A DNA stretch of 64,000 nucleotides, from positions 124,001 through 188,000 of IMG/VR virus record IMGVR_UViG_3300028654_000384; one strand, 5' to 3'. The notes below the pieces were generated by a model. It had not been told where the DNA came from, did no database searches, and was given only the letters and a program-made list of their open reading frames with translations. The position numbers and the translations under genes were made by a program. Each line of letters starts with the position of its first letter. Position 1 is the first letter of the stretch. This document shows positions 24,974-60,646 of this stretch, in pieces.

Positions 24974-25003
24974 ACTGTACCACGGACGTGACCGAACTTA
25001 CAC
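24974..25003 (-). promoter_or_regulatory. phage promoter GTGTAA-18-TACAGT
   Basis: Consensus match, followed by TAGATC. Confidence 0.8.
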
Positions 25004-25189
25004 CCAGGAGTTGACGAGCGAACGTTCGAAGTGAGTCAGCATCCACGTAGCATCCAGCACCTTGACCAAGTTGGCAGGGTCTTTCACCCCGTATGCTTGC
25101 CTCTTGACGCCATTGGGGAGCGTGAACTCGACCCGGTTGGTCGTGGGATCAATGACGGTAAAAGTTGTCGTTGCTGCTCTCTTCACCAT
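24998..25189 (-). CDS. hypothetical protein (leaderless)
   Basis: ATG 6 nt after -10. Confidence 0.7.
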   Translation of the reverse strand: MVKRAATTTFTVIDPTTNRVEFTLPNGVKRQAYGVKDPANLVKVLDATWMLTHFERSLVNSWV

Positions 25190-25195
25190 GATCTA

Positions 25196-25225
25196 ACTCT
25201 ACCACGGTTCACCAGGGACTTACAC
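25196..25225 (-). promoter_or_regulatory. phage promoter GTGTAA-18-TAGAGT (leaderless)
   Basis: Consensus match; near-identical to the 31595 copy. Confidence 0.85.
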
Positions 25226-25232
25226 CGTCCAC

Positions 25233-25255
25233 GAATTATACTCGAGGTGTAATTC
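25233..25255. promoter_or_regulatory. 23-bp palindromic operator GAATTATAC-N5-GTGTAATTC
   Basis: 7 bp upstream of the -35; one of five copies. Confidence 0.75.
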
Positions 25256-25340
25256 CTCGGGCCGCCCATGTGGGCGAGGTATGATACCCCGTCCCAGCAC
25301 CCGTGACGACACGGTGGGCGGTCTGTGGGTGGTGGTTCCG

Positions 25341-25613
25341 TCACCAGGTGGGCCTGGCATACTGTCGGGTGGGCATGTCATCCCAGTCGTCCGGGGCACC
25401 CACGGGATGCGTGGTCGAACGTGACAGGACGTCACGGGAGACGCTTGGTGCGTTCCTGACGGCGTCTCTTCGCGCATCGTCGAGGAGGATCGCCAGTGAA
25501 CCCGCGATGGCGGTGACTTCGGCCTCTGACTTGCCGTCATCGAGGCCCGTCTGGTAGATCCACAGGTGGGACAGCGCAAGGGTGCGAACATCGTGACGAT
25601 TGTTCTTCATCAT
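25341..25613 (-). CDS. hypothetical protein, paralog of 23860-24150 (leaderless)
   Basis: LALSHLWIYQTG motif; ATG 6 nt after -10. Confidence 0.7.
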   Translation of the reverse strand: MMKNNRHDVRTLALSHLWIYQTGLDDGKSEAEVTAIAGSLAILLDDARRDAVRNAPSVSRDVLSRSTTHPVGAPDDWDDMPTRQYARPTW

Positions 25614-25619
25614 GAATGT

Positions 25620-25673
25620 ACAGTACCACACTTGACCACGGCGCTTGCACTCTGCGCGGGAGGGTGGTACAAT
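25620..25673. promoter_or_regulatory. overlapping divergent promoters sharing one hexamer (GTGCAA-19-TACTGT on -, TTGCAC-17-TACAAT on +)
   Basis: Both -10 boxes are 6 nt from an ATG (25613 and 25680). Confidence 0.7.
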
Positions 25674-25679
25674 TGAAGC

Positions 25680-25871
25680 ATGAGAACCACGTTGATCACA
25701 TTCGTGGCACTCGTCATCACGTGTGTCATCGTCTCGTATGCCTGTGTCTACTCGCCGCCCAATTCCCTGCCCAACGGACACTCGCGGTGCGAGTACAACG
25801 CTGATTGTAGGCCACCCCAACAGTGTGACAGGGGCCTGTGTACCCTCGAACCCCATGACGTGGGGCGCTGA
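25680..25871 (+). CDS. small Cys-rich secreted/membrane protein
   Basis: Hydrophobic N-terminus; C..N..C....C....C disulfide pattern. Confidence 0.7.
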   Translation: MRTTLITFVALVITCVIVSYACVYSPPNSLPNGHSRCEYNADCRPPQQCDRGLCTLEPHDVGR

Positions 25872-27165: not shown

Positions 27166-27410
27166 CTCTGCACCGTGCGCACGTTCTTGCTCCATACCCA
27201 ACCCAGCGTGTTCTTCGACGTCAAGATCAACACTTCTTCCGGCGGGATGCGAGGCTGACAAACGTTGATGACGAGCGCGATGTCACTTGCGTGCAGGAAG
27301 CCGACGCCAAGATTGTCCTCCGTTCGCATGCCCGGATACTGCGTCATGCAACACCGATAGTCGTAGTCATACCCAACCAGCAGGGTGACGAGTGAGCCGG
27401 GCGTGATCAC
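27162..27410 (-). CDS. KOW/SH3-like PGxL family protein
   Basis: TPGSLV..IALVINV..VLILTSKNTLGWV. Confidence 0.75.
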   Translation of the reverse strand: MITPGSLVTLLVGYDYDYRCCMTQYPGMRTEDNLGVGFLHASDIALVINVCQPRIPPEEVLILTSKNTLGWVWSKNVRTVQR

Positions 27411-27721
27411 GGGCGGTGAAGGTTGCACTGATCACGGGGAATGTCGCAGTTGCAATTGCCGGGAGCGACGCGCCGCCTGAACAGCTTCCAGATGCGCTCC
27501 TCCTCGTGATCGACCTGTGGTTCACCCACCACGACGGCGAGCTCAACGTTCTCAATTGGTTCACCATCGATGATTTCAAAGCGATTGCGATTCCAATACC
27601 CAGGCACGTCGACGAGCGTGTAGACGCGCGTGGCACCATCATCTTCGAGGACGCTGTAGACGTGACCCTCGGTCAGCTTGTCGGAGGCCAACCCACTGAC
27701 ATCAATGCACTTGACCTTCAT
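27407..27721 (-). CDS. hypothetical phage protein (KVKC..LT.G.VY.V type) with C-terminal CxC..C..H (leaderless)
   Basis: Related motif to 708-932; ATG 6 nt after -10. Confidence 0.7.
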   Translation of the reverse strand: MKVKCIDVSGLASDKLTEGHVYSVLEDDGATRVYTLVDVPGYWNRNRFEIIDGEPIENVELAVVVGEPQVDHEEERIWKLFRRRVAPGNCNCDIPRDQCNLHRP

Positions 27722-27727
27722 GGTTCA

Positions 27728-27757
27728 ATCCTATGCCAATTGCAGGGCACTTTGCAC
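27728..27757 (-). promoter_or_regulatory. phage promoter GTGCAA-18-TAGGAT (leaderless)
   Basis: Consensus match; spacer nearly identical to the 32306 copy. Confidence 0.85.
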
Positions 27758-28001: not shown

Positions 28002-28243
28002 TTCGACACCACGTTGAGCCATGATTGACTCATCCAACCTACCCTGTTCAACGCTGACACGTAGACGATGACCTCGAGAGTATATGAGTCCGACGCACCT
28101 AGAATGAGCACCAACGAGCCGAGCGCGATCGCCGTGGGGATGTTACCGTAATCACTGTCACTGATCGTGCCACGTGGCCACAACTGACACCACACGCGCG
28201 TCACTGCTAGTTGGCCGATCAACGCGACGGATACAGTGTTCAC
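27998..28243 (-). CDS. KOW/SH3-like family protein
   Basis: LIGQLAV..SLVLIL..VYVSALNRVGWM. Confidence 0.7.
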   Translation of the reverse strand: MNTVSVALIGQLAVTRVWCQLWPRGTISDSDYGNIPTAIALGSLVLILGASDSYTLEVIVYVSALNRVGWMSQSWLNVVSK

Positions 28244-28497
28244 CGGCGCTCCAAGTGCTCGACGCGTTGAATCACCGACGTGTAGATCCAACCCACCGCG
28301 CTAGTTAGTGACTCAATGACCTGTGCCCGTCGGTCGCCGCCGGTATCGAACGTAATCGCAATGACAAGACCAAAGTTGAAGTCACACAGGCGTCGTCTAT
28401 GTCCCATATCACCATAGACGCCCGGACGCCAAGAAGACGCGTGAAGTGATGTCGGGTACCAGATCAGGTCACCAGGATGGAAAATGCGGGTCACCAC
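28240..28497 (-). CDS. KOW/SH3-like PGxL family protein (leaderless)
   Basis: HPGDLI..GLVIAI..AVGWI. Confidence 0.75.
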   Translation of the reverse strand: MVTRIFHPGDLIWYPTSLHASSWRPGVYGDMGHRRRLCDFNFGLVIAITFDTGGDRRAQVIESLTSAVGWIYTSVIQRVEHLERR

Positions 28498-28501: not shown

Positions 28502-28783
28502 TTATCCTACACCGACAACTATTTCGGTTACACCGTGCCAGTGGGTGCCACGTCCCATCACCTCTTCACTGATTTCGTGAATGTACAGACGACCGCGCAT
28601 TAATAGGATCAATTCGATTACGTCGTCGGACCGCAATCTTCGCCTGCTGATGATCATGGCAAGGGTGTCTGCGTTGAACACCGTGAACCTGCCCAGCGTG
28701 AAGTGATTGAGAGGTCGATTATCAACGAGTCGTGCATGCATCATCGTCAGGGAAGTGATGAGGTCACCCGGTTCAAACTTCAT
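28502..28783 (-). CDS. KOW/SH3-like PGxL family protein
   Basis: MKFEPGDLI..AMIIS..LILLMRGRL. Confidence 0.7.
   Translation of the reverse strand: MKFEPGDLITSLTMMHARLVDNRPLNHFTLGRFTVFNADTLAMIISRRRLRSDDVIELILLMRGRLYIHEISEEVMGRGTHWHGVTEIVVGVG
28504..28533 (-). promoter_or_regulatory. phage promoter GTGTAA-18-TAGGAT (leaderless, inside the upstream gene's 3' end)
   Basis: GTG start 6 nt after -10. Confidence 0.8.
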
Positions 28784-29085
28784 GGGGTGATCACCTTGAT
28801 GAAGGTGCTGTTGATCCAACCCATGCCCTGCGCGGTGACGATGAAGACATAATGTCCCATCACCGTCGCCATAACTGTGCTAGCGACGATTCCGACGTAG
28901 AGCGAATCAATGTACGTGTAATGACTGTCGTACACGTGGCCGGATACATCCGTATGAACGATGATGCACACGTCGCCCGGATAGTATGCGTGTCCCATGA
29001 TGCGCGGGGGCAGTGCCGTCCACGAATAACCTGGGTGCCTGAAGGTCACCAGCGCGCCCGGTGTGGCCTGAGCGGGGGTGATCAT
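28780..29085 (-). CDS. KOW/SH3-like PGxL family protein
   Basis: TPGALV..DVCIIV..VFIVTAQGMGWI. Confidence 0.75.
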   Translation of the reverse strand: MITPAQATPGALVTFRHPGYSWTALPPRIMGHAYYPGDVCIIVHTDVSGHVYDSHYTYIDSLYVGIVASTVMATVMGHYVFIVTAQGMGWINSTFIKVITP

Positions 29086-29354
29086 GCGCGCACCAGGTCG
29101 GTGGGAAACACCCACCCCACGCGATGGCCGAGCAAGACACAGATCCATTGAGTGCCTGGTGAAAAGATGTGGGATACGTCCTTCACGTAATTGATGACGA
29201 GGCACCGTTTACCACGGCGATACCATCGGAGGCCACTACTATTTTCCCCGGGATGAGTGATCCTGACTGCAACATCCTCGCCGTGTCGCCGCGCGTGCGA
29301 CGACCCATGGAGGCAACACAGCGTCCCGGGCAGGAATTGCTCCTCATGGGTCAT
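29082..29354 (-). CDS. KOW/SH3-like PGxL family protein
   Basis: LPGTLCCL..CLVIN..ICVLLGHRVGWVFPTDL. Confidence 0.75.
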   Translation of the reverse strand: MTHEEQFLPGTLCCLHGSSHARRHGEDVAVRITHPGENSSGLRWYRRGKRCLVINYVKDVSHIFSPGTQWICVLLGHRVGWVFPTDLVRA

Positions 29355-29366: not shown

Positions 29367-29396
29367 ATCCTATCACACCATGGCGTCGACTTGCAC
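29367..29396 (-). promoter_or_regulatory. phage promoter GTGCAA-18-TAGGAT
   Basis: Consensus match. Confidence 0.8.
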
Positions 29397-30167: not shown

Positions 30168-30430
30168 GGAACATCACTCGTCTTCGCTATGCGAACGGCG
30201 CGGAAGATCGCTCCGATCACGTGGCTGCCTTCGAGCGCGCGAGATAACCCATTACAGTTCAACCACGTCAGGATGCCTTCGGCGCGGGCGACCAACAGGT
30301 TAACGCCACCGATGAGCACGAAGCGATGCTCGACGGATGACCATATCTCTTCATGCGTGACAACCTCATTGCCGTTACGGGTGTACACCCACTTGATGAG
30401 GTCGCCGGGCTTCAATTCACTCGGCGTCAT
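30164..30430 (-). CDS. KOW/SH3-like PGxL family protein, WxY/IGGV subfamily
   Basis: KPGDLIKWVY..EEIWS..IGGVNLL..LTWL; cf. 47217 and 57660. Confidence 0.75.
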   Translation of the reverse strand: MTPSELKPGDLIKWVYTRNGNEVVTHEEIWSSVEHRFVLIGGVNLLVARAEGILTWLNCNGLSRALEGSHVIGAIFRAVRIAKTSDVP

Positions 30431-31208
30431 CAGGTGCAACCCAATCCTGACCCTTGGTGAATGAACCGCGGTTCTCGATGCCCGTCTTGGTCAAGGCGAC
30501 GACGAACGTTTTCCCGCTACAACCCCACCTGTTCTTGCTGACCTCGAACAACAGGCCCCCAAACGTCGGGCTCTTCTTGTTCTCGTCGTACGACAGGTGG
30601 GCATGGACGTCGATGGCGTGGCGGATGGTGTTCTTGCCCGCGAATTCTCCACCCTTGGTACATTGTCCCACGAAGATGCAGAAGGCGAAGTTCTGCTGGC
30701 ACCAGGCGACCAACATCTCAGTGCAGCGCACCGGGGTGTTGCCCGTCGTCCCACCGTCCTTGTACTTCATGTCGTTCAACGTCTGCAGTGAATCTTGCAG
30801 TAGGACGATGACCTTGCCCGGGTTGGCCTTCTTGACGCCGTCGAGGAACTTCAACAGCTTAGGCAGGTTAGTCTCCTCGGCGACCATGAAGTCGTGCTTC
30901 AACTGCAACCGTTCAACGGCCAGCTTGGCCTGAAACAGGCTCTCTTCGCCCGTGTTGTAGACGACGATGTGACCCGCACCCGTCAGCGTCGACGCCAACT
31001 GGCGCACCAGCGTTGACTTGCCGGTGCCCGGGCCACCCGTCAGCATCAGCGTCGTCGTCGCGGTGAAGCCACCTTCGCCGCCCAACGCCTCGTCGATCCA
31101 ATCGAGGCCCGTCGAGTGCTTGACCCGCAGTTCGGGTGGCACCGCGATGGTGCTGATCTTCGTCCCAGCCTTGAAACCACGCCCAACGTGCAGATTCATC
31201 TCGGCCAT
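30417..31208 (-). CDS. RecA-superfamily ATPase, RadA/Sms-like core only
   Basis: TGLDWIDEALGG, GGPGTGKST, YNTGEES, DSLQT, GQCTKGG..AG, KNRWG (RadA KNRFG-like); no Zn finger or Lon-like domain. Confidence 0.85.
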   Translation of the reverse strand: MAEMNLHVGRGFKAGTKISTIAVPPELRVKHSTGLDWIDEALGGEGGFTATTTLMLTGGPGTGKSTLVRQLASTLTGAGHIVVYNTGEESLFQAKLAVERLQLKHDFMVAEETNLPKLLKFLDGVKKANPGKVIVLLQDSLQTLNDMKYKDGGTTGNTPVRCTEMLVAWCQQNFAFCIFVGQCTKGGEFAGKNTIRHAIDVHAHLSYDENKKSPTFGGLLFEVSKNRWGCSGKTFVVALTKTGIENRGSFTKGQDWVAPDDAE

Positions 31209-31238: not shown

Positions 31239-31268
31239 ACTCTACCAGGTTCGTGGTGGAACTTGCAC
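31239..31268 (-). promoter_or_regulatory. phage promoter GTGCAA-18-TAGAGT
   Basis: Consensus match; leader with GGAG before RadA-like gene. Confidence 0.8.
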
Positions 31269-31390: not shown

Positions 31391-31420
31391 ATCCTACCAC
31401 GGTCGCCGGCGAACTTGCAC
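31391..31420 (-). promoter_or_regulatory. phage promoter GTGCAA-18-TAGGAT (leaderless)
   Basis: Consensus match. Confidence 0.85.
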
Positions 31421-31594: not shown

Positions 31595-31624
31595 GTGTAA
31601 GTCCCCGGTGAATCGTGGTAGAGT
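31595..31624 (+). promoter_or_regulatory. phage promoter GTGTAA-18-TAGAGT (leaderless)
   Basis: TAGATC then ATG 31631. Confidence 0.85.
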
Positions 31625-31630: not shown

Positions 31631-31930
31631 ATGGTAGCAAATAGGTCTCGCCTCAACGTGCCCATCCACAGTGCTCGCAAGTTCAGGTGGAGCAACGATT
31701 TCACCGGCAGTGCCGAGGTGTCTGACTTCAGCCGAACAATCAGCTCGCGGGTGTACACCGATGCCGCGGACGTGGGTTTCATCTGTGAATCACCGCGGAC
31801 GGGTAAACAGGTGCTGTTCACGTTGTGTGAAGAAGAACGGCACGATGGTGAGTTGGTGTCGGAGACCTACGTGTCGTGCGCTTTTGGGGGTTGGGTGCCC
31901 GACATGCGCATCATAATCTTCAACGACTGA
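31631..31930 (+). CDS. hypothetical protein (leaderless)
   Basis: Own promoter. Confidence 0.7.
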   Translation: MVANRSRLNVPIHSARKFRWSNDFTGSAEVSDFSRTISSRVYTDAADVGFICESPRTGKQVLFTLCEEERHDGELVSETYVSCAFGGWVPDMRIIIFND

Positions 31931-31931: not shown

Positions 31932-31961
31932 GTGCAAGTTCAACTCCGAACCTGGTAGGAT
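31932..31961 (+). promoter_or_regulatory. phage promoter GTGCAA-18-TAGGAT (leaderless)
   Basis: TAGATC then ATG 31968. Confidence 0.85.
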
Positions 31962-31967: not shown

Positions 31968-32264
31968 ATGATCAAATACAAGCGTGCCCCTGCCGGGTAC
32001 ATTGCCCAGTTCTTCACAGACGAGAAGCTCCCATACCCGGGCGCGGTCAACCAGGATTACCGTGACAACCATTTCATGGACGTGACAGGAGACTGGTGTC
32101 CCACTCTCCCGGAGGCGATCGAGTCAGTCAAGAAACAACGTCCCAAGGAGATCAAGAAGCTCCAGAAAAAGCTCGAAGCGCTTGAGGCGAGAGCTCAGGA
32201 ACTGAGGGCTTACATCAAACAACTCCAGGAAACGTCAGCGACCTCCGTCGAAGAGAAAGTCTGA
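31968..32264 (+). CDS. hypothetical protein with C-terminal coiled coil (leaderless)
   Basis: Own promoter. Confidence 0.7.
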   Translation: MIKYKRAPAGYIAQFFTDEKLPYPGAVNQDYRDNHFMDVTGDWCPTLPEAIESVKKQRPKEIKKLQKKLEALEARAQELRAYIKQLQETSATSVEEKV

Positions 32265-32305: not shown

Positions 32306-32335
32306 GTGCAAGTTGCCCTGCAACTGGCATAGGAT
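32306..32335 (+). promoter_or_regulatory. phage promoter GTGCAA-18-TAGGAT (leaderless), preceded by a decayed copy at 32274
   Basis: TAGATC then ATG 32342. Confidence 0.85.
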
Positions 32336-32341: not shown

Positions 32342-32584
32342 ATGGCAAAGAGAACCCTCAAAGTCGGCGACGAATTCCACAAGGGCCTGTGCATTGTGCG
32401 GGTGATGACCCTCGAGAACCCGGGCAGGTTCCCGGTACGCTACGTGTGGGTCGTCGAGGCCAATGGCCGCCGCGAAGCGGACCATTGTGGCCGTGAAATG
32501 GCCGGCGTCAATTCGGTCAGCGGCACCTTCAAGTTCCTCGAAGGCGAGGGCTTCACCTATCACCCGGTGCAAGTCACCGCCTGA
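32342..32584 (+). CDS. small beta-rich protein, SH3-like (leaderless)
   Basis: LKVGDEF..IVRV..VRYVW. Confidence 0.7.
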   Translation: MAKRTLKVGDEFHKGLCIVRVMTLENPGRFPVRYVWVVEANGRREADHCGREMAGVNSVSGTFKFLEGEGFTYHPVQVTA

Positions 32585-32596
32585 TCGTGGTAGAGT
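32567..32596 (+). promoter_or_regulatory. phage promoter GTGCAA-18-TAGAGT (leaderless)
   Basis: TAGATC then ATG 32603. Confidence 0.85.
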
Positions 32597-32602: not shown

Positions 32603-33034
32603 ATGGCAAAGAAAGTAGCAAAGAAGTCATCCAAGGCGACACCGTCTCACTACTGCGTCGGCGACACATTTGTACACTCCGACCACAACGCGGGAGTGCA
32701 CATCCGGGTAGTAGCTGTCACCTCTAACTCGGTGTCTTACACGTGGCACTATTCGCCCGGTGGTGTCGGCGAGCCACCGTGGAAACAGCCCGTGTCACAT
32801 TCACAGTTTCAAACGCTGCTCACTGACTTTGGCTTCACAAAGCAAAGCTGTAACAAGAGACGCGCGGCGCTCGTCGATCACATTGCACTGGCGGTGTGCA
32901 ATGCGTTCAACCGAGAGGTCAGCAACGCGCTCAGTGAATTGACTCCCGTGTCGCCCGGGCTCATTGAACACGATGGGGCGATGATCATCATGAAAGATGC
33001 AGTGCACGCCGCCATTCAGCGCTTGACTTCGTAG
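32603..33034 (+). CDS. hypothetical protein, N-terminal SH3-like part (leaderless)
   Basis: CVGDTF..IRVVAV..VSYTW. Confidence 0.7.
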   Translation: MAKKVAKKSSKATPSHYCVGDTFVHSDHNAGVHIRVVAVTSNSVSYTWHYSPGGVGEPPWKQPVSHSQFQTLLTDFGFTKQSCNKRRAALVDHIALAVCNAFNREVSNALSELTPVSPGLIEHDGAMIIMKDAVHAAIQRLTS

Positions 33035-33039: not shown

Positions 33040-33069
33040 GTGCAAGTCTTCCGTCACTCGTGGTATCCT
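33040..33069 (+). promoter_or_regulatory. phage promoter GTGCAA-18-TATCCT
   Basis: Consensus match with TGG extension. Confidence 0.7.
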
Positions 33070-38900: not shown

Positions 38901-38930
38901 ATCCTACCAGGAACGGGTGGTCTCTTGCAC
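38901..38930 (-). promoter_or_regulatory. phage promoter GTGCAA-18-TAGGAT (leaderless)
   Basis: Consensus match. Confidence 0.85.
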
Positions 38931-38978: not shown

Positions 38979-39008
38979 GTGCAAGTCTCAAGTAAACCGT
39001 GGTACAGT
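38979..39008 (+). promoter_or_regulatory. phage promoter GTGCAA-18-TACAGT (leaderless)
   Basis: TAGATC then ATG 39015. Confidence 0.85.
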
Positions 39009-39014: not shown

Positions 39015-39260
39015 ATGGACCCCAACAGCAGCTTCGAGATGGAGTGGATCATCTGCATCAACTTGCAGCCGGCGCCCTCGGTGATCACCAAGCTACCCAA
39101 TGTCTACTTGACCAACGTGAACGTCGACACCCGGGTCACCACCAACATCTACCAGGCGCAGGGTTACCACTACAAGTCAGACGCTCGGGTCGCTGCCGAG
39201 CTGACCGGTGTGGTCTACGACATTCGCCGACGACGTGACTTCCGCGCCTCAACGGTGTAA
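39015..39260 (+). CDS. hypothetical protein (leaderless)
   Basis: Own promoter. Confidence 0.7.
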   Translation: MDPNSSFEMEWIICINLQPAPSVITKLPNVYLTNVNVDTRVTTNIYQAQGYHYKSDARVAAELTGVVYDIRRRRDFRASTV

Positions 39261-39284
39261 ACTCCTCACCGTACGTGGTAGAAT
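39255..39284 (+). promoter_or_regulatory. phage promoter GTGTAA-18-TAGAAT
   Basis: Consensus match. Confidence 0.8.
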
Positions 39285-39316
39285 GGTACTTGATGGTGGA
39301 TGAAGCAGTCCACACA

Positions 39317-42369: not shown

Positions 42370-42399
42370 GTGCAAGCGCACTGACTTCTGGCTTACAGT
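42370..42399 (+). promoter_or_regulatory. phage promoter GTGCAA-18-TACAGT (leaderless)
   Basis: TAGATC then ATG 42406. Confidence 0.85.
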
Positions 42400-43197: not shown

Positions 43198-43227
43198 GTG
43201 CAAACACTGCACCAACCGTGTTAGGAT
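43198..43227 (+). promoter_or_regulatory. phage promoter GTGCAA-18-TAGGAT (leaderless)
   Basis: CTGATC then ATG 43234. Confidence 0.85.
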
Positions 43228-47216: not shown

Positions 47217-47495
47217 ATGAAGCCCGGAGACATGATCGAATGGCGCTACGAGTCGAGCGATAAGCCCATCGCCCGTGATGAATATGTCTGGTCATCGGTG
47301 ATGAACCGTTGGTTGCCCATCGGCGGTGTACACCTGTTGATCAGTCGTGACAATGACGAGCTGACGTGGCTCTACACAAGTGCCGGTGCCACGCGCATCG
47401 GCAAGGCACTGGTTAGTGACAGCAACCTGGGTCGCTTAGATAAACGAGTGTTCGATGGGTGCTACCCCGTCGTAGTGCAAGGTCACCTCACTTAG
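47217..47495 (+). CDS. KOW/SH3-like PGxL family protein, WxY/IGGV subfamily
   Basis: MKPGDMIEWRY..YVWS..IGGVHLL..LTWL. Confidence 0.75.
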   Translation: MKPGDMIEWRYESSDKPIARDEYVWSSVMNRWLPIGGVHLLISRDNDELTWLYTSAGATRIGKALVSDSNLGRLDKRVFDGCYPVVVQGHLT

Positions 47496-47531
47496 GTCTA
47501 TAATGGTCTTTCAACGCTAGAAAGCAGTGCA

Positions 47532-48798: not shown

Positions 48799-48820
48799 TG
48801 AAAGTAACGAGAGAGGGAAT

Positions 48821-49909: not shown

Positions 49910-49919
49910 AGGACATCAG

Positions 49920-51662: not shown

Positions 51663-52618
51663 AAATTTTATCGCTTATAGCTCTAGTACTGTCTTCGTGT
51701 GTAAGTAGCAATCTCTATTTTAGAGAAGTTCACGCTAAAAAGCCAACATTTTCATTAGAGGAGAAAAAAATGACAGTCATAAACAACGATTCTGTGCGTG
51801 GACTATTTGTGTGGGATGATGTTGCTAACTCAGAAGAGGAAATTACCAGTTTAGTAACTTTTTGTAAAGTAAAGGAAATCAACGTAGTATATGCATCATT
51901 GTATAGTCACTTACTTGTAAAAAAAGATTTTGTCGCAGTTCAAAATCTACTCAATAGTTTGCATTCCAACGGAATAAAAGTTCATGCATTGTTTGGTAAT
52001 TCAGATTACGGTTCCAAAAAACAATGGGTTGTTGAAAACGTTGGCGAAGCAGTAGTTCAATATAATTCAGTATCATCTGATAAAATCGATGGTGTGTTGC
52101 TAGACGCTGAGTATTGGTCTGGTAGTGCTGGACATCATACGCAAGCCGATGCGATAGGCATGATGGATCTAATAAGGGCACTAAAAATAAAAACTGGCAC
52201 GCCAGTTGGATTTAGCCCTCCGTACTGGTTTGCAGATCCTAAAAATAATCAAGCGCTGGACGTTGTTTATGATGGACACACAATGAAAGAAGGTCAGCAC
52301 ATGATTTATGTTGCGGACTACGTTGTAGTGCAGGACTATTTTAGTGATCCACAAAAACAGATTGAACATTTCAATCCGTGGTTTGATTTTGCAGTTTCTA
52401 CCGGTAGAAATGTTGGTTTGGTGTTGGCATCAGAAGTTAGTGAGCCATCGAAACTAGCTCATGCCTATTCCTATAATAGACTACAGGTGGGTGATGAGGC
52501 GCACATGCAGTCTAGCCTGGCCAGCGTTTCGCAATTCTATACAATGAAGCACGGTGCAGACAGGGTATGGTGGGGTTGTGCTATTGAGCAGTATCGTTCG
52601 TATCGTCAGATGAAGTAA
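51659..52618 (+). CDS. lipoprotein glycoside-hydrolase-like TIM barrel (GH18-like)
   Basis: Lipobox LSSC; RGLFVWD, KVHALFG, IDGVLLDAEYW; GTGA/ATGA-type overlap with synthase. Confidence 0.6.
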   Translation: MKILSLIALVLSSCVSSNLYFREVHAKKPTFSLEEKKMTVINNDSVRGLFVWDDVANSEEEITSLVTFCKVKEINVVYASLYSHLLVKKDFVAVQNLLNSLHSNGIKVHALFGNSDYGSKKQWVVENVGEAVVQYNSVSSDKIDGVLLDAEYWSGSAGHHTQADAIGMMDLIRALKIKTGTPVGFSPPYWFADPKNNQALDVVYDGHTMKEGQHMIYVADYVVVQDYFSDPQKQIEHFNPWFDFAVSTGRNVGLVLASEVSEPSKLAHAYSYNRLQVGDEAHMQSSLASVSQFYTMKHGADRVWWGCAIEQYRSYRQMK

Positions 52619-52930: not shown

Positions 52931-53971
52931 ATGTCGAAACGTATCATCACGGTGCTCGCCGCAATCGCGCTGGCATCAGTCACCTCCGCCGCATCGGCCG
53001 AGGACTTCTCGCTCCACGTCGAAGGCGGCCCGGCGCTTCAGCTCCGCGCCCCCAACGGCGACATCGTCGACCACAATCGCTTCAAGTTCGGCGCTAGTGG
53101 TGAGGTCGACGGCCTCATCGCCTTGATCCCCAACCTCGCAGTCGGTCCGACGGTGTCGGCGGTGTTTCTGCCGCAGTCCACCCCCAATACCGAAGGCGCT
53201 GTCATGTGGCAGTTCGACGGCACCGTCCGCCTGCAGGGCGCGCGCTCGGCCGGCTGGTCGCCCTACATTCAAGGTTCGCTCGGCGCTGCGAAACAGGCGG
53301 CGATCTGGAACCCGGGTTTCATGACGCAGGTCGGCGTCGACTTCGCCCTCAATCAGGAGCACTCGTCGTGGCTCGGCCTTTACGTGGGCTGGGACAAAGT
53401 GCTCGACACCTACAACGCCGCTGACAAGCAGACGGCGCTGCTCTCTCGCCAAGACACCAGCGTCGGCACCGCAGGCGTCAGCATGTCGTTCGACTTCCCG
53501 TCGAAGCACGCAAAGCGCACCCTCGGCGTCATCACGGTGCAGGAACCGGCACCCGCCTGCCCGCCCGCTCCCGCTGCCCCTGTCGCAGCGCCCGCTCCCG
53601 CGGCCGACGACGGCACGGCACTGTTGGCACCGTCGGTACAGTTCGACAAGGACAGCTTCGTTGTCAGCGCAGACGCTCAGGCGATGCTGACCGACTTCGC
53701 CTCGCAGTACAATGCTGCTCCCGGTGCGAAGAACTACATGCTGATGGTCGAGGGTTATGCCTCGTCGGAGTGCAGTGCGTGCGAAGTTACGCACAACCTC
53801 GTACTGTCGAATAGCCGCGCCAACGCGGTCGCAGACGTCCTCGTCAACAGTGGCAAGGTCGATCGCACCATGATCCACCCGGTCGCCTTCGGCGGCGTGG
53901 GCGCCCCGAACGATGCGAGCAACCGACGCGTCGACACGATTGTCATTCGCCTCGTGAAGATCCAGAAGTAA
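52931..53971 (+). CDS. OmpA family outer-membrane protein (beta-barrel + Pro/Ala hinge + OmpA_C)
   Basis: Signal peptide; amphipathic strands; VQFDKDS, VEGYAS, NLVLS..RANAV, NRRV; AAGGAG RBS. Confidence 0.9.
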   Translation: MSKRIITVLAAIALASVTSAASAEDFSLHVEGGPALQLRAPNGDIVDHNRFKFGASGEVDGLIALIPNLAVGPTVSAVFLPQSTPNTEGAVMWQFDGTVRLQGARSAGWSPYIQGSLGAAKQAAIWNPGFMTQVGVDFALNQEHSSWLGLYVGWDKVLDTYNAADKQTALLSRQDTSVGTAGVSMSFDFPSKHAKRTLGVITVQEPAPACPPAPAAPVAAPAPAADDGTALLAPSVQFDKDSFVVSADAQAMLTDFASQYNAAPGAKNYMLMVEGYASSECSACEVTHNLVLSNSRANAVADVLVNSGKVDRTMIHPVAFGGVGAPNDASNRRVDTIVIRLVKIQK

Positions 53972-54291: not shown

Positions 54292-54321
54292 GTGTAAATT
54301 GGACGCAGCTCGACTTAGGAT
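54292..54321 (+). promoter_or_regulatory. phage promoter GTGTAA-18-TAGGAT
   Basis: Consensus match; AAGGAG RBS follows. Confidence 0.8.
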
Positions 54322-54348: not shown

Positions 54349-55143
54349 ATGAAGAGTACGTTGATAGGTCTGTGCGTTGCCCTGTGCTGCGTGGGTGTTG
54401 CGACCAACGCCATGGCACAGGACAAGGGTACCAACAGCGCCGACGTCGCGGATCAGGCGTCGACCGTCGTGCACAACGACGTGCAGGTTGCGAACGATCT
54501 GGTGAACCAAGTCGGCACGCAAGAGCCCGTGGTTGCACCGCCAGCAGTTGCACCCGTGGTGCCTGCCCCCGCGACCGTGGCACCCGTCGGCGATCACACC
54601 CACGATCAGTGGTACCATCGGGGCAACTACGAGTACTACTCTCCCACCGAGTACCACCCCGACATCCGCGCCTCACTGCACCCGCACCAGCTCCACGCGG
54701 GCCTGTACCTCGACGCGGGTTTCCCGAGCGGTGCCAGCGCCGGCGTGCTGGTGTCGCCCTGGCTCCCGTGGTTGAAGCTGGGCGTGGGCGGCAACTACAA
54801 CTACGTGGGTGAGGGCCTGTCGGGCCACGTCACCCTCGATCCCTTCCACTTCCCGGTGTCGCTGACGCTGACGGGTGAGGCGGGCGGCTTCTTTCCGTCG
54901 ACGATCCCGGGCATCAAGAACAGCCCGACCGTCGCCTATACCTACGAGAGTGCGTTGCTGGGCCTCGAGCTTGGCTCACAGCGTCACCTGCGTTTCTTCC
55001 TGCGGGGCGGCATCAGCCACGTCGATGCCAGCGTCAGCAACTTCGGCACCGCCTTCACGCTGCCCAACGGCGTCAGCATCGGCGAACCCAACATGAGCCT
55101 CGTCGCTCCCGCGGGTAAATTCGGCATTGATTGGTTGTTCTAA
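54349..55143 (+). CDS. outer-membrane beta-barrel protein, myxobacterial type
   Basis: Signal peptide; LDAGFP.G..PW..L.LG.G..YNYVG..LGLE.GS..FFLRGG; C-terminal aromatic WLF. Confidence 0.7.
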   Translation: MKSTLIGLCVALCCVGVATNAMAQDKGTNSADVADQASTVVHNDVQVANDLVNQVGTQEPVVAPPAVAPVVPAPATVAPVGDHTHDQWYHRGNYEYYSPTEYHPDIRASLHPHQLHAGLYLDAGFPSGASAGVLVSPWLPWLKLGVGGNYNYVGEGLSGHVTLDPFHFPVSLTLTGEAGGFFPSTIPGIKNSPTVAYTYESALLGLELGSQRHLRFFLRGGISHVDASVSNFGTAFTLPNGVSIGEPNMSLVAPAGKFGIDWLF

Positions 55144-55791: not shown

Positions 55792-55821
55792 GTGCAAGTC
55801 TCCACCGATCCGTGGTACTGT
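55792..55821 (+). promoter_or_regulatory. phage promoter GTGCAA-18-TACTGT
   Basis: Consensus match + TAGATC. Confidence 0.8.
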
Positions 55822-56304: not shown

Positions 56305-56334
56305 GTGTAAGTTAACACCCAACAGTGATAGGAT
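56305..56334 (+). promoter_or_regulatory. phage promoter GTGTAA-18-TAGGAT (leaderless)
   Basis: CTGATC then ATG 56341. Confidence 0.85.
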
Positions 56335-56340: not shown

Positions 56341-56961
56341 ATGGCATACGACGAAGCATTCTTCACCGCCTACCGCGCCTACCTGCAGGAGACCCTCGTC
56401 AGGAAGAACCACAGGCGAGCCTTCGATCACCTCATCGGCCTGATGACCGACGGGCCCATCGATTACGCTCCTCGCGTCGTCGACCTGGGTTGTGGTACCG
56501 GTGAGTTCTACGAGCGGGGTTATCACCGCGACTACGTCGGCATCGATCTCAATCCACGCATTGCCTGGCAGGGCGCCAAGGTGATCAAGGCCTCCAGCGT
56601 CGACGTCGATGCATGGAGCAAGCAGCTACCCTTCGAGCCCAACACCTTCGTCAGCGTGTTCTCGATCGAGCCAATGCGGGGCGCGTACTATCGCTACGAG
56701 CTGTACGATCGCCTGTTCAGGGAGTTGCCGTCGCTGCAGTTCGGCATGTCGGCAGGTTTCTACTATGACAATGAGCGTATGGGCGACCGCAAGGTCAGCG
56801 AGGCGGGTGGCATCGTCAGCTGGCAGACCAACCAACTGTTGGGCAAGGACGGTGATCGCAGCCTGTACAATGAAGAGTGGCTGACGATGCGGACGCCGTC
56901 GCAGATGTTCGGGCCCGACGTCGTCGAGGTCTGGAAGTTCTTCAGTCGAGTGCAGCCGTGA
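56341..56961 (+). CDS. class I SAM-dependent methyltransferase
   Basis: VVDLGCGTGE, YVGIDLN motifs. Confidence 0.85.
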   Translation: MAYDEAFFTAYRAYLQETLVRKNHRRAFDHLIGLMTDGPIDYAPRVVDLGCGTGEFYERGYHRDYVGIDLNPRIAWQGAKVIKASSVDVDAWSKQLPFEPNTFVSVFSIEPMRGAYYRYELYDRLFRELPSLQFGMSAGFYYDNERMGDRKVSEAGGIVSWQTNQLLGKDGDRSLYNEEWLTMRTPSQMFGPDVVEVWKFFSRVQP

Positions 56962-58072: not shown

Positions 58073-58080
58073 CGAGACAA

Positions 58081-58110
58081 GTGCAAGTTCACCCCTGACC
58101 ATGGTAGGAT
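58081..58110 (+). promoter_or_regulatory. phage promoter GTGCAA-18-TAGGAT (leaderless)
   Basis: TAGATC then ATG 58117. Confidence 0.85.
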
Positions 58111-58116
58111 TAGATC

Positions 58117-58413
58117 ATGGCAAAGCAGACGGCAAAAGCAACGATCGTCAACGGCATCCACGTCCTCCACACCGACGGCGGACGCAAGACCTACGGCATC
58201 ACCGTCCGGGCGACGGGCACCGAAGCCGACGTCGAGAAAAAAGGCTTCAAGCGCGAGTGGGACCTCAATGCCCGCTACATTCTCGACACCACGTTCGAGC
58301 GTCTTGAGGGACTGTTGGGCCTGTCTCGCCTTGAACACGTTGCCCTCATCGTCGCCGCTCAATCGAAGATGAACGAAGAGGCGGCCGCCGAGGCACAGCG
58401 CTTCACCAAGTAA
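58117..58413 (+). CDS. hypothetical protein (leaderless)
   Basis: Own promoter; high GC3. Confidence 0.75.
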   Translation: MAKQTAKATIVNGIHVLHTDGGRKTYGITVRATGTEADVEKKGFKREWDLNARYILDTTFERLEGLLGLSRLEHVALIVAAQSKMNEEAAAEAQRFTK

Positions 58414-58441
58414 ATCAGGTGCAGGTGATCACGGAGATCGA

Positions 58442-58651
58442 ATGAAACTCATCAAGTGTACACAGACAAACGACGGCCTCATCCACTTCGAGCCCGATGA
58501 TGCCGAAGATCAAGCGTTGCTCGACGAGTGGGAAACGTTGAAAAAGTGCATGTTGACCGGCGATAGGTTACGCGGCAACATGCATGAAGTGCATGTTTAC
58601 GATCAGATGAATGCGCTGCGCGAGAAGATCATGAAGAGGTTGACGCCGTAA
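58442..58651 (+). CDS. hypothetical protein
   Basis: GGAG RBS. Confidence 0.65.
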   Translation: MKLIKCTQTNDGLIHFEPDDAEDQALLDEWETLKKCMLTGDRLRGNMHEVHVYDQMNALREKIMKRLTP

Positions 58652-58680
58652 TTTCATGAAATTCTTGCTACTTATTGGGC

Positions 58681-59619
58681 ATGTTGCGTAGACTCGGCGA
58701 ATTACGTGAATTCATCGCCCTCGAACTGATGTTCGAGGCGTTGAACGTCGGGGCCATGGCAACCCGCGGTGCGAACGGAAAGGGCATCGTCACCGACTCA
58801 AGTCGCTCTGAGGACGGTCATGCATCGCACTTTGTCGCGGTGTCAACGAGCGTCAAAGCAGCGTACAAGATTGCACACGATGCAGAACTACCCAAGGTGC
58901 TCGGAGCCGTTGTTGGCATCGAGAAGTCGCCAGTCAAGGGCAAGCAGGTGTGGCAGTTGAAGACGCTCTATGCTGACAATCCTAGCACGATGATGGTGCT
59001 GTTGGCCACGGCGTTGTCACGCTGGGGCGTCATCGTCCCCGACACAAGCGTCAGTCCTGCCGTGTCCGCCGTCATCAAGCGCTACTACGAGATGTACAAG
59101 GGCGACCCAACACGCGTCAAACAGTGTTTTGACCGCGACATGAGCTTTGAGGAAACGCGTGACTACAAGGAGGCGCCATGGCGCTGGGCCGCATACTTGG
59201 GGCCTGTCCCGGGATTCAACCTTGATGCAGTCATCAAGGCGGGTGATGATGCAGTGGCATCTGCCACCGACCCTACCAACCCACCCGTCAAGGATGAGAA
59301 GCGTACCAGGGCTTGGATCCGCATCGTCGGCGAACAGGGCTTTGGAGCGGCCTTTGCCGATCCTGACAAGACGGGTCGCAAGGCCGTCGAGGCCTCTGAC
59401 TTCAGCGCCATGCTACGCAATGCACGTCATGGATTTGACGATAGTGACAAGTTGCTGTTATCGCTGATGCGTGCGTTGGGAGCGGGCGAGAAGACGCGCG
59501 CTCGTAAGATTGCGCTTGACTGGTACGCCGACAACAAGACACACGTCAACGACCTGTTCAAAGATGATGTAACATGGACCGAACACGGTGTGAACTTGCT
59601 GACCGATCCCGACGCGTGA
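58681..59619 (+). CDS. putative virion/internal head protein
   Basis: MLRRLGELREFIALE N-terminus; CTACTTAT 5 nt upstream; 14-bp palindrome AATTTCATGAAATT at 58650-58663. Confidence 0.7.
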   Translation: MLRRLGELREFIALELMFEALNVGAMATRGANGKGIVTDSSRSEDGHASHFVAVSTSVKAAYKIAHDAELPKVLGAVVGIEKSPVKGKQVWQLKTLYADNPSTMMVLLATALSRWGVIVPDTSVSPAVSAVIKRYYEMYKGDPTRVKQCFDRDMSFEETRDYKEAPWRWAAYLGPVPGFNLDAVIKAGDDAVASATDPTNPPVKDEKRTRAWIRIVGEQGFGAAFADPDKTGRKAVEASDFSAMLRNARHGFDDSDKLLLSLMRALGAGEKTRARKIALDWYADNKTHVNDLFKDDVTWTEHGVNLLTDPDA

Positions 59620-59649
59620 GTGCAAGAACACCCACCACCGGTTTAGGAT
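59620..59649 (+). promoter_or_regulatory. phage promoter GTGCAA-18-TAGGAT (leaderless)
   Basis: ATG 59656 6 nt after -10. Confidence 0.85.
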
Positions 59650-59655
59650 GGAACC

Positions 59656-60606
59656 ATGGATCCCATCGAAGTCCTCGAACTGTGTGCACGTGCTAGCGAC
59701 GAAGGCGCGCCCTCCGACGTCCTCGTCCCGCACGTCTTCACCTCGGGTGACTATGAGGCGATGTGGCGGCGTGACCCCGACAAGGTGCGTCAGATCCTCG
59801 ATCGACTGATGTGCGGTGTTCACGCCGATGACGGCCTCGACCTGTTGATGAAGTCGGGTGCGCTGAACGCCTTGTTGCCAGAGTTGGTGGCGATCAAGGA
59901 CTTGGGCGATGACCCCGCCTCCACGCTGCACAAGGACGTGTGGACGCACACACAGAACGTGGTGATGGGCGTGCCTGCCGTGGTGGAACTGAGGTATTCT
60001 GCGCTCTTCCACGATGTCGGCAAGGCGCTGACCCGCAAGTTCGACGGTCGCAAGGTCACCTTTCACAACCACGACGTCGTCGGCGCACGCCTCGTCCTCA
60101 ACGTCGAGCTACGCCTCGGCCTGTTTGGTGACGACGGTGCACTGTTCTCGACTGTCCGCAGCTTGGTGTTGAACCACCTGCGGCCCGCGGGTTACAAGAA
60201 AACGTGGACCGACTCGGGGGTCAGGCGCCTGCTCGTCGACGTCGGCGGGCTCGAGGGCTTTGAGCGCCTGATGCAGTTGTCACGCGCCGACCTGACGACC
60301 AAGAACCCGACGAAACGCGCCAACTGTGTTCGCCGCGGCGATGAGCTCGAAGCACGGGTGCGGGCAGTGCTCGCGGCTGATGCGGCGCCGAAGCTACCCA
60401 AGGGCACGATGGGCCTCATCATCGAACGTCGGGTGCTGCCCGTGGGCCCCGCGTTGAACCTCGTCCGCGACGGGCTCGAGCAGATGCTGCGGGTGGGCAC
60501 CTTGCCCACGGGCCACGATGCACAGTGGTACGCGACCGAGGGCCTCAGGCTGTTGTTGGCACAGGGCCCGGTGGTGGGCATCCACGATAAATTGGTGAGC
60601 ACCTAG
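59656..60606 (+). CDS. HD-domain phosphohydrolase homologous to the C-terminal half of CCA-adding enzymes; no nucleotidyltransferase head
   Basis: SG.L..LLPEL, HKDVWTHT, ALFHDVGK, FHNH..VGA, LV.NHLRP, WTDSGVRR, L.RAD.T. Confidence 0.85.
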   Translation: MDPIEVLELCARASDEGAPSDVLVPHVFTSGDYEAMWRRDPDKVRQILDRLMCGVHADDGLDLLMKSGALNALLPELVAIKDLGDDPASTLHKDVWTHTQNVVMGVPAVVELRYSALFHDVGKALTRKFDGRKVTFHNHDVVGARLVLNVELRLGLFGDDGALFSTVRSLVLNHLRPAGYKKTWTDSGVRRLLVDVGGLEGFERLMQLSRADLTTKNPTKRANCVRRGDELEARVRAVLAADAAPKLPKGTMGLIIERRVLPVGPALNLVRDGLEQMLRVGTLPTGHDAQWYATEGLRLLLAQGPVVGIHDKLVST

Positions 60607-60616
60607 CGCAGAGACG

Positions 60617-60646
60617 GTGCAAGCCGCCGGTGACATGGCCTAAGAT
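60617..60646 (+). promoter_or_regulatory. phage promoter GTGCAA-18-TAAGAT
   Basis: ATG 60654 7 nt after -10. Confidence 0.75.

What the first reader, a model, noticed from the sequence alone, without database searches (positions are those of the whole stretch)
24974..60646. Strict GTGYAA-N18-TAnnnT promoter regulon producing leaderless mRNAs
Seen: 24 copies on both strands, 23 with an exactly 18-bp spacer. The -10 is often TGG-extended (TAGGAT, TAGAGT, TACAGT) and followed by (T/C)(A/T)GATC. In 16 cases the start codon lies exactly 6 nt after the -10 with no RBS. Established: TSSs lie about 6-7 nt downstream of the -10, so these transcripts should start at the AUG. Inference: a non-canonical -35 and fixed 18-bp spacer suggest a phage sigma factor or a MotA-like activator, and an early/middle programme built largely on leaderless translation.
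Basis: partly seen in the sequence, partly recalled or inferred. Interest (0 to 1): 0.72.

Follow-up and report, generated by a model that had tools for sequence, protein, structure and literature searches.

The report
Leaderless promoter regulon of jumbo phage
An uncultivated soil phage of about 360 kb places dozens of near-identical promoters so that transcription should begin on the start codon; the pattern is real and shared with related phages, but the factor that reads its odd upstream box is unknown.

Summary
GTGYAA-N18-TANNNT occurs 25 times in the window (0.31 expected) and 45 times in the 215,857-bp viral contig. Other spacers give 0-4 copies. In 29 of the 45 copies a start codon (28 ATG, 1 GTG) lies exactly 6 nt after the -10 and opens an ORF with coding-like GC3.

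The same layout recurs in four related jumbo-phage contigs, in front of unrelated genes. The box is discrete: TTGCAA and CTGCAA never carry a -10 at this distance.

It is best read as a set of extended -10 promoters that produce leaderless mRNAs. Most sit before small ORFans, as in an early gene region.

The phage does encode an RpoD-like sigma with a conserved truncated region 4. However, the sigma operon lies downstream of a motif copy in all four phages where this was examined, so host RNA polymerase probably fires these promoters first. No MotA or AsiA homologue was found.

No RNA data could be obtained, so the transcription start sites are inferred. The host is also unresolved. I rate this a new variant of known kinds (phage-specific promoter classes; leaderless "group C" architecture).

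The parts
16716..16745 (-). Pattern match with a weak -10 (TAACCT) and no start codon at +6.
24974..25003 (-). Promoter copy (GTGTAA, TGG-TACAGT, tagatc). No start codon at +6. The gene 24400-24936 (-) begins at an ATG about 37 nt after the -10 and has a GAAGGAG ribosome-binding site.
25196..25225 (-). Promoter copy. ATG 6 nt after the -10, leaderless ORF 24998-25189 (-), 63 aa.
25620..25650 (-). Variant with a 19-bp spacer (TGG-TACTGT, acattc, ATG). The ATG at 25613 is in frame within ORF 25341-25856 (-), so the true start is ambiguous.
27728..27757 (-). Promoter copy. Leaderless ORF 27407-27721 (-), 104 aa, no Pfam match.
28504..28533 (-). Promoter copy. GTG 6 nt after the -10, ORF 28240-28497 (-), 85 aa. 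This is the only non-ATG case.
29367..29396 (-). Promoter copy. ATG 12 nt after the -10 (very short leader), ORF 29082-29354 (-), 90 aa.
31239..31268 (-). Promoter copy with a leader of about 30 nt. ORF 30417-31208 (-), 263 aa, P-loop NTPase (KaiC/AAA-like).
31391..31420 (-). Promoter copy. Leaderless 37-codon ORF. Stands back-to-back with the + strand copy at 31595.
31595..31624 (+). Promoter copy. Leaderless ORF 31631-31930, 99 aa.
31932..31961 (+). Promoter copy. Leaderless ORF 31968-32264, 98 aa.
32306..32335 (+). Promoter copy. Leaderless ORF 32342-32584, 80 aa.
32567..32596 (+). Promoter copy overlapping the 3' end of the preceding ORF. Leaderless ORF 32603-33034, 143 aa.
33040..33069 (+). 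Promoter copy with -10 TATCCT. Leader of about 32 nt with AAGGAA. ORF 33102-33341.
38901..38930 (-). Promoter copy. Leaderless ORF 38712-38894 (-), 60 aa. Divergent from the copy at 38979, 48 bp away.
38979..39008 (+). Promoter copy. Leaderless ORF 39015-39260, 81 aa.
39255..39284 (+). Promoter copy (TGG-TAGAAT). An in-frame ATG at 39293 lies 8 nt after the -10; alternatively a ribosome-binding-site-led ATG at 39377. The ORF runs to 40009.
42370..42399 (+). Promoter copy. Leaderless ORF 42406-43149, 247 aa, no Pfam match.
43198..43227 (+). Promoter copy. Leaderless ORF 43234-43428, 64 aa.
47475..47504 (+). Promoter copy with -10 TATAAT and a leader of about 175 nt. Precedes ORF 47680-48798, the first gene of a low-GC island.
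54292..54321 (+). Promoter copy with a 27-nt leader and AAGGAG. ORF 54349-55143, 264 aa.
55792..55821 (+). Promoter copy (TGG-TACTGT, tagatc). ATG at 55842, 20 nt after the -10, in frame with the ORF ending at 56303.
56305..56334 (+). Promoter copy. Leaderless ORF 56341-56961, 206 aa, weak methyltransferase-domain matches.
58081..58110 (+). Promoter copy. Leaderless ORF 58117-58413, 98 aa.
59620..59649 (+). Promoter copy. Leaderless ORF 59656-60606, 316 aa, HD-domain protein.
60617..60646 (+). Promoter copy (-10 TAAGAT). ATG at 60654, 7 nt after the -10, in frame with the ORF ending at 60875.

Best explanation
These are promoters of the bacterial sigma-70 type. They belong to an uncultivated myovirus-like jumbo phage; contigs carrying one of its proteins reach 361 kb. 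Each copy combines four parts: an extended -10 (TGn-TANNNT, most often TGG-TAGGAT); a box specific to this phage family, GTG(C/T)AA, exactly 18 bp upstream; a 6-nt stretch downstream of the -10; and then the ATG. RNA polymerase normally starts about 7 nt after the -10, so the transcript should begin on the A of the start codon and be translated without a leader or Shine-Dalgarno site.

Most copies head single small ORFans or short operons in the variable, two-strand part of the genome, as early host-takeover genes do.

The likeliest enzyme is host RNA polymerase with the host primary sigma, engaged mainly through the TGn/-10 element. The box would add strength or specificity. Whether the host sigma or some other factor reads the box is not settled.

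The phage's own sigma operon is one product of this regulon. That sigma would act on a later promoter class; the candidate is the -10-only word TA(C/G)TTA, found in front of structural genes.

Shown: the motif, its spacing, its coupling to start codons, and its conservation. Inferred: the start sites, the timing, and the identity of the polymerase and sigma.
For: - Enrichment and strict spacing.
- Extended -10 and start-codon coupling. 29 of 45 copies have a start exactly 6 nt downstream, against about 0.7 expected for ATG by chance, and the ORFs have coding-like GC3.
- One orthologous pair, G000:192350 and G002:28724, aligns from residue 1.
- The same layout occurs in distinct relatives, before non-homologous genes. 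G002 has 21 copies (18 leaderless), G003 has 6, L151 has 5 plus 5 GTGAAA variants, and L149 has 3. The spacer ends and the 'tagatc' stretch differ between lineages, while the box, N18, TANNNT and N6-ATG are kept.
- No column covariation, so no hairpin.
- No phage RNA polymerase was found in 358 kb of this phage.
- The sigma operon lies downstream of a copy in G000, G002, L149 and L151. In G000 no canonical promoter was found on the operon's strand.
- Other genes of the phage use TANNNT-N6-ATG with -35 hexamers such as TTGTAC, TTGACC, GTGAAC and CTGAAC at 17-18 bp.
- A Pribnow box 6-8 nt from the start codon is the standard leaderless architecture of 'group C' bacteria (PMC6028130).
- One Myxococcota genome reached through isocitrate lyase similarity has an excess of TGG-TAGnnT-N6-ATG with no conserved -35: 15 hits against 2 in the control. 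A host-type extended -10 alone can therefore precede leaderless genes.
- T4 early promoters are likewise unusually uniform, multi-element promoters read by unmodified host polymerase (PMC2988021).
Against: - No transcription start site is mapped. No RNA run was listed.
- The box matches TTGACA at only 3 of 6 positions and lies 1 bp further out than the phage's TTGACA-like -35 hexamers. The closer match TTGCAA is never used. This looks like a dedicated reader rather than ordinary sigma region 4.
- The motif is not enriched over a reversed control in 5 bacterial genomes chosen by isocitrate lyase similarity.
- It is also not enriched in 151 Actinomycetota genomes. That sample includes three unpublished genomes (G129, G010, G097). 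Only their counts were used, and the other 148 show the same result.
- The box is kept across relatives whose GC content ranges from 39% to 62%. This fits a phage-encoded reader at least as well as a host one.
- The host is unidentified.
Confidence: 0.5

Rival explanations
1. Activator-dependent promoters in the manner of T4 middle promoters. Host sigma reads the TGn/-10. A phage protein, either made from the TTGACA-like promoters or injected with the DNA, binds the GTGYAA box in place of a -35 contact. These genes would then form a delayed-early or middle class.
For: - The box is discrete and invariant at a fixed distance, and the more canonical TTGCAA is never used.
- A second promoter population with TTGACA- or TGAAC-like hexamers at N17 exists. 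It sits mainly before DNA-metabolism genes and could be the factor-independent class.
- The box is conserved across relatives of very different GC content.
- T4 middle promoters have the same logic: a host -10, often with TGn, plus a phage box at a fixed distance (PMC2988021).
Against: - No MotA C-terminal domain or AsiA family match in 358 kb of this phage.
- No candidate activator was identified.
- The most conserved small regulator candidate, the 100-aa helical protein, is itself encoded in an operon driven by this motif.
Confidence: 0.25
2. The phage's own RpoD-like sigma reads these promoters, alone or with the conserved 100-aa helical protein encoded in the same operon. Its remodelled region 4 (or its partner) would recognise GTGYAA, and the operon would be self-activating.
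For: - The sigma has intact regions 2 and 3, including the YATWWI and LPAH motifs.
- Its C-terminus ends inside the region 4.2 recognition helix, and the invariant tail PITEEE..VM.G.GLT is shared by 5 phages.
- The order sigma, small gene, 100-aa protein is conserved.
- The 100-aa protein has 522 homologues at 65% identity or more, many on contigs of 320-370 kb.
- Complex prediction gave weak support: ipSAE 0.35 against a best control of 0.01. That mark was reached by 58 of 80 solved complexes and 2 of 110 mismatched pairs, but such low passes are more often wrong than right. The predicted interface is sigma residues 228-254, which is region 4.1.
Against: - The sigma operon lies behind the motif in all four phages examined, and no alternative promoter was found. 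The sigma would therefore be needed for its own first synthesis, unless it is packaged in the virion.
- The 100-aa protein shows no significant fold match to sigma region 4 or to any helix-turn-helix protein. Foldseek's best E-value was 0.9, and the best Z-score was 4.7.
- It has no Pfam match.
Confidence: 0.15
3. The element is not mainly a promoter. It could be a repressor operator, a recombination cassette or a transcribed RNA signal, with transcription starting elsewhere.
For: - Positions with no known promoter role are conserved within each lineage (spacer ends GT.. and ..CGTGG, and 'tagatc').
- Two copies, at G000:207868 and 209412, share about 110 bp at 92% identity. This suggests spread by duplication or recombination.
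Against: - The positions kept across lineages are exactly the promoter-relevant ones.
- The orientation always matches the downstream gene, and the distance to the ATG is fixed.
- There is no base-pair covariation.
- There is no excess of terminators.
Confidence: 0.05

Closest known systems
Leaderless gene architecture of 'group C' bacteria (Actinobacteria, Deinococcus-Thermus; GeneMarkS-2 classification, PMC6028130)
   Same: A TANNNT box lies 6-8 nt before the start codon of first genes in operons. The start is AUG. Internal or leadered genes have a Shine-Dalgarno site (here AAGGAG).
   Different: Here the pattern is in a phage. The promoters are near-identical copies carrying an extra conserved upstream box. 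The host phylum is unknown. An OmpA-type outer-membrane protein and the isocitrate lyase tree hint at a Gram-negative host, not an actinobacterium.
T4 early promoters and PeSL cassettes of T4-like phages (PMC2988021; PMC2839356; PMC4122927)
   Same: Many highly uniform, multi-element promoters (-35, TGn, -10) precede small ORFans in variable regions. The promoter is conserved while the genes between copies differ among relatives.
   Different: There is no stem-loop or terminator component. The -35 box is unlike TTGACA. The transcripts are predicted to be leaderless.
T4 middle promoters (MotA box plus sigma-70 -10; sigma appropriation by AsiA and MotA; PMC2988021, PMC6755090)
   Same: A phage-specific box replaces a canonical -35 at a fixed distance from a host-type -10, often with TGn.
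   Different: The box lies 18 bp from the -10, not 12 +/- 1. No MotA or AsiA homologues were found. No activator is identified.
Phage sigma cascades (SPO1 gp28 then gp33/34; T4 gp55 with gp33) - recalled from my own knowledge, not tested here
   Same: The phage encodes a sigma whose gene is expressed from an earlier promoter class. A -10-only word, TA(C/G)TTA, precedes structural genes.
   Different: This sigma is RpoD-like with regions 2, 3 and 4.1 intact and only region 4.2 truncated. Its target promoters are not established.

Membership tests
Sigma-70-type promoter (-35 / extended -10) | -10 hexamer TANNNT | tested here: met
   Required by the pattern. The -10 is TAGGAT, TAGAGT or TACAGT in 19 of 24 copies.
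Sigma-70-type promoter (-35 / extended -10) | TGn immediately upstream of the -10 | tested here: met
   TGN in 16 of 24 window copies, TGG in 13. G at -14 in 31 of 45 copies and T at -15 in 28 of 45.
Sigma-70-type promoter (-35 / extended -10) | -35 hexamer resembling TTGACA, 16-18 bp upstream | tested here: not met
   GTGYAA matches 3 of 6 positions. The consensus scan called none of the copies. TTGCAA is never used.
Sigma-70-type promoter (-35 / extended -10) | Transcription starts 6-8 nt after the -10 | not testable with these tools
   No RNA run was listed.
Leaderless mRNA genes (group C architecture) | Pribnow box 6-8 nt from the start codon, with no room for a ribosome-binding site | tested here: met
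   Exactly 6 nt in 29 of 45 copies, and 7-8 nt in a few more. There is a peak at 5-7 nt for non-motif genes too.
Leaderless mRNA genes (group C architecture) | AUG start and a real coding ORF | tested here: met
   28 ATG and 1 GTG. GC3 mostly 0.65-0.93. In-frame stops lie just upstream. One ortholog pair aligns from residue 1.
Leaderless mRNA genes (group C architecture) | The 5' end of the mRNA coincides with the start codon | not testable with these tools
   No RNA data.
T4-type middle promoter / sigma appropriation | A phage box replaces the -35 at a fixed distance from a host-type -10 | tested here: inconclusive
   The form is present, but no binding protein is known.
T4-type middle promoter / sigma appropriation | MotA and AsiA homologues encoded by the phage | tested here: not met
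   PF09158 and PF09010 gave no match at E <= 1 in G000 plus G001.
PeSL mobile promoter cassette | An early promoter joined to a stem-loop terminator, flanking variable ORFs | tested here: not met
   Promoters do flank variable ORFans. There is no covarying stem and no excess of terminators: 10 found against 12.4 in shuffles.
Regulon of a phage-encoded sigma | The phage encodes a sigma able to read both promoter elements | tested here: inconclusive
   The sigma is present with regions 2 and 3. Region 4.2 is truncated but conserved.
Regulon of a phage-encoded sigma | The sigma gene is expressed from a promoter class other than its own | tested here: not met
   The sigma operon follows a motif copy in 4 phages. 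In G000 no other promoter was found.

The most novel reading that the evidence does not exclude
A widespread family of soil and freshwater jumbo phages of roughly 320-370 kb carries its own reader for a private -35 box. The phages would use it to run a programme of more than 50 leaderless transcripts. [quoted passage not shown]
Probability: 0.2. Interest if true: 0.8.

Novelty: new variant of a known kind. Interest (0 to 1): 0.55.

Why it matters
Transcription programmes of uncultivated jumbo phages are almost unknown. This case gives three things:
- a promoter class that can be read from sequence alone;
- an explicit rule for calling leaderless gene starts that standard gene callers tend to miss;
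- a conserved sigma module with an unusual region 4 that can be expressed and tested.

The motif also marks the variable, probably early, gene region in relatives. It could help to annotate and to bin contigs of this phage family.

If the box proves to have a phage-encoded reader, it would be a new way of redirecting bacterial RNA polymerase. If host sigma reads it, it defines the host's promoter preferences and may help to identify the host.

Tried and rejected
- **RNA evidence.** Two run searches found only rhizosphere and freshwater DNA runs and no RNA run.
- **Close relatives among isolated phages.** There is no near DNA match. Protein matches for DnaE and sigma are all below 40% identity.
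- **Hairpin in or around the box.** By eye, several copies seemed to have stems flanking GTGYAA. Column-pair analysis of the 45 copies gave a maximum z of 3.0 among about 1,500 pairs, so I rejected this.
- **The 100-aa protein as a sigma region 4 domain.** My reading of its helix as region-4.2-like found no support:
  - no Pfam match;
  - no solved-structure sequence match;
  - no Foldseek hit below E = 0.9;
  - VIA-align Z of 4.7 or less, with only scattered LysR- and LuxR-type helix-turn-helix matches at Z 3.3-4.2.
- **Complex prediction of sigma residues 150-281 with the 100-aa protein.** This gave weak support only: 0.35 against a best control of 0.01. That mark was reached by 58 of 80 solved complexes and 2 of 110 mismatched pairs, and low passes are more often wrong than right. 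I do not treat it as evidence of binding.
- **Phage RNA polymerase, MotA, AsiA and WhiB.** None was found. A very divergent polymerase could be missed.
- **Host inference.**
  - The isocitrate lyase tree puts the phage copy on a long branch among mixed Gram-negative soil phyla.
  - The motif is not enriched in 5 genomes chosen by isocitrate lyase similarity, nor in 151 Actinomycetota genomes.
  - TGGTAGNNT-N6-ATG is in excess in a few Myxococcota genomes (G007: 15 against 2; G173: 11 against 3). Over the 31-genome sample the excess is mild (about 126 against 93). It is absent in 26 Gemmatimonadota genomes.
  - These are leads only.

Full report
**What the window is.** The window is bases 124001-188000 of a 215,857-bp IMG/VR viral contig. 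The contig is linear, about 63% complete by CheckV, and 57.5% GC. Other assemblies hold the same phage. One contig extends the right end by about 82 kb, and contigs carrying one of its proteins reach 361 kb.

The phage encodes the following:
- two tail-sheath paralogues of about 1,000 aa;
- a DnaE-type polymerase, a DnaB helicase and a class II ribonucleotide reductase;
- a GroEL-like chaperonin;
- a cluster of about 15 tRNAs;
- an ATP-dependent DNA ligase;
- isocitrate lyase and malate synthase.

No multisubunit or T7-like RNA polymerase was detected. There is no near DNA match among isolated phages. The DNA is present in many rhizosphere metagenome runs.

**The observation.** GTGYAA-N18-TANNNT matches 25 times in the window, against 0.31 expected. 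It matches 45 times in the contig, while spacers 14-22 other than 18 give 0-4 copies each. The extension adds 8 more.

In 29 of the 45 copies a start codon (28 ATG, 1 GTG) sits exactly 6 nt after the -10. It opens an ORF of at least 30 codons with GC3 mostly 0.65-0.93. In the common form two in-frame stops precede the ATG, so the ORF cannot start earlier. Most of the remaining copies have a 7-8-nt gap, or a 12-37-nt leader that usually carries an AAGGAG-type ribosome-binding site; a few have much longer leaders (about 175 nt at 47475) or no clear downstream gene.

**Specificity.** The box is discrete. 20% of all GTGYAA words carry a -10 at N18. The figures for near variants are 0/54 for TTGCAA, 0/145 for CTGCAA and 5/100 for GTGAAA, and 2% or less for every other one-mismatch variant tested. 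No pair of columns covaries, so there is no conserved hairpin. Terminator-like sites are not in excess.

**Conservation.** A scan of IMG/VR for the extended motif returned the same phage and three distinct relatives.
- G002 (35 kb, coding regions about 70% identical) has 21 copies, 18 of them leaderless.
- G003 has 6 copies.
- Two more distant relatives were reached through a conserved protein: L149 from a 340-kb contig and L151 from a 325-kb contig with 62.5% GC. They keep GTG(C/T/A)AA-N18-TANNNT-N6-ATG but differ in the spacer ends and in the stretch between the -10 and the ATG.
- A 39%-GC relative (L152) has only isolated examples.

The genes behind the copies are almost never homologous between phages. 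Only one ortholog pair was found, and it aligns from residue 1. The element is therefore a regulatory cassette placed before changing cargo.

**Context within the phage.** Copies are dense at G000 149-168, 178-185 and 192-215 kb and in the first 14 kb of the extension. Genes there are short and lie on both strands, and they mostly lack Pfam matches. Only 5 copies fall in the 0-124 kb structural and replication part.

Leaderless layout is not confined to this motif. For non-motif genes, TANNNT also peaks 5-7 nt before the first ATG. About 35 such sites have other upstream hexamers at 17-18 bp, including TTGTAC, TTGACC, GTGAAC, GTGACC and CTGAAC.

A third word, TA(C/G)TTA, is the most enriched intergenic word once the motif is removed. 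27 of its 56 copies lie in the 8.6% of the genome that is non-coding (p about 1e-14), and close variants are not enriched. It stands 4-8 nt before ATGs, or ahead of ribosome-binding-site-led starts, including both sheath genes. It is a candidate late promoter.

**Who reads the motif.** The phage encodes one sigma-70-family protein of 281 aa (L010:1303-2148). Region 2 scores 80-82 bits, region 3 is weak, and region 4 is not called. Its best family matches are RpoD and RpoS.

Aligned to solved RpoD chains, it ends inside the region 4.2 recognition helix. The odd C-terminus...YPITEEEA.QVM.GKGLT followed by the stop, is invariant in five phages.

The gene order is conserved: a protein of about 125-158 aa, then sigma, then a small gene, then a 100-aa protein, with an AAA_5 ATPase and the ligase further on. 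The 100-aa protein has 522 homologues at 65% identity or more.

In G000, G002, L149 and L151 this operon lies downstream of a motif copy. In G000 no canonical promoter was found on its strand.

The box may still need a dedicated factor. It is discrete, it is offset by 1 bp from the TTGACA-like hexamers, and it is kept across relatives of very different GC content. It is not a common promoter form in the bacterial genomes sampled. One search includes three unpublished genomes (G129, G010, G097), of which only counts were used. MotA and AsiA families are absent.

The idea that the 100-aa protein completes the sigma got only weak support from complex prediction (score and calibration under Tried and rejected). 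Fold searches gave it no support.

**Host.** Several lines point to a Gram-negative soil bacterium rather than an actinobacterium:
- The phage encodes an OmpA-type protein with a signal peptide, a beta-barrel-like N-terminal half, a Pro/Ala hinge and an OmpA C-terminal domain. Its nearest clusters are from Gram-negative phyla.
- The isocitrate lyase falls among mixed Gram-negative soil phyla.
- No WhiB-like protein is present.

One Myxococcota genome shows an excess of TGG-TAGnnT-N6-ATG with no conserved -35. The phylum-wide signal is mild, and it is absent in Gemmatimonadota. The host remains unresolved.

This matters for how surprising the finding is. Leaderless starts are routine in Actinobacteria and Deinococcus-Thermus but rare in Proteobacteria (PMC6028130). 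The jumbo phage phiKZ shows none (PMC8244752).

**Verdict.** The promoter-plus-leaderless reading is well supported by sequence but not by RNA data. The proposed phage sigma or activator is possible but is not the favoured reader.

I class this as a new variant of known kinds: uniform phage promoter classes as in T4 (PMC2988021, PMC2839356, PMC4122927), combined with the group C leaderless architecture.

Noticed in passing
G000:203218-204063 (L010:1303-2148), outside the window; relatives at L059:1060-1965 (-), L149:8703-9596, L151:8628-9452, L152:8726-9562: RpoD-like phage sigma with regions 2, 3 and 4.1. Its C-terminus stops inside the region 4.2 recognition helix. The tail PITEEE..VM.G.GLT is invariant in five phages.
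   Followed up: yes
G000:204733-205035 (L010:2818-3120): 100-aa all-helical protein in the sigma operon. It has 522 homologues at 65% identity or more, many on contigs of 320-370 kb, and an invariant stretch MNHSSARNYVLRVMRKF. It has no family or fold match. Its predicted contact with sigma region 4.1 is only weakly supported.
   Followed up: yes
Whole contig, e.g. G000:5992, 9940, 13896, 95893, 102510; window 4922, 41428, 58669, 60916: The word TA(C/G)TTA is strongly concentrated in non-coding DNA (27 of 56 copies; p about 1e-14). It lies 4-8 nt before ATGs or ahead of ribosome-binding-site-led starts, including both tail-sheath genes. It is a candidate late, -10-only promoter.
   Followed up: partly
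G000:104342-107374 (L006:9342-12374): Adjacent malate synthase and isocitrate lyase genes (the glyoxylate shunt). Such pairs in huge phages from soil and plant habitats have already been reported (bioRxiv 10.1101/2025.02.27.640493).
   Followed up: partly
window 47680-52618: Low-GC island (40-49% GC against 57.5% for the genome) with four ORFs of 372, 362, 580 and 319 aa and no significant Pfam match. It is preceded by a motif copy with a TATAAT -10 and a leader of about 175 nt. It was probably acquired from elsewhere.
   Followed up: no
window 52931-53971: OmpA-type outer-membrane protein with a signal peptide, a barrel-like N-terminal half, a Pro/Ala hinge and an OmpA C-terminal domain. This hints at a Gram-negative host.
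   Followed up: partly
window 3165-4532 and 5210-6871: An AAA ATPase and a divergent GroEL-like chaperonin (Cpn60_TCP1, 235 bits) encoded by the phage.
   Followed up: no
window 59656-63966: A block of an HD-domain protein, a polysaccharide pyruvyl transferase and a GT4 glycosyltransferase. In the 39%-GC relatives (L152-L155) the same block lies about 5 kb upstream of the sigma operon.
   Followed up: no
whole contig: GATC is over-represented (1,486 copies against about 804 expected from base composition) and CTAG is rare (208). GATC forms part of the conserved 'tagatc' stretch just before many leaderless ATGs.
   Followed up: no
G000:207809-207917 and 209353-209461: Two motif copies, together with the first codons of their genes, form a repeat of about 110 bp at 92% identity. 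This suggests promoter cassettes spread by duplication or recombination.
   Followed up: no
G000:6035-9115 and 9963-13013: Two paralogous tail-sheath-like genes of about 1,020 aa each.
   Followed up: no
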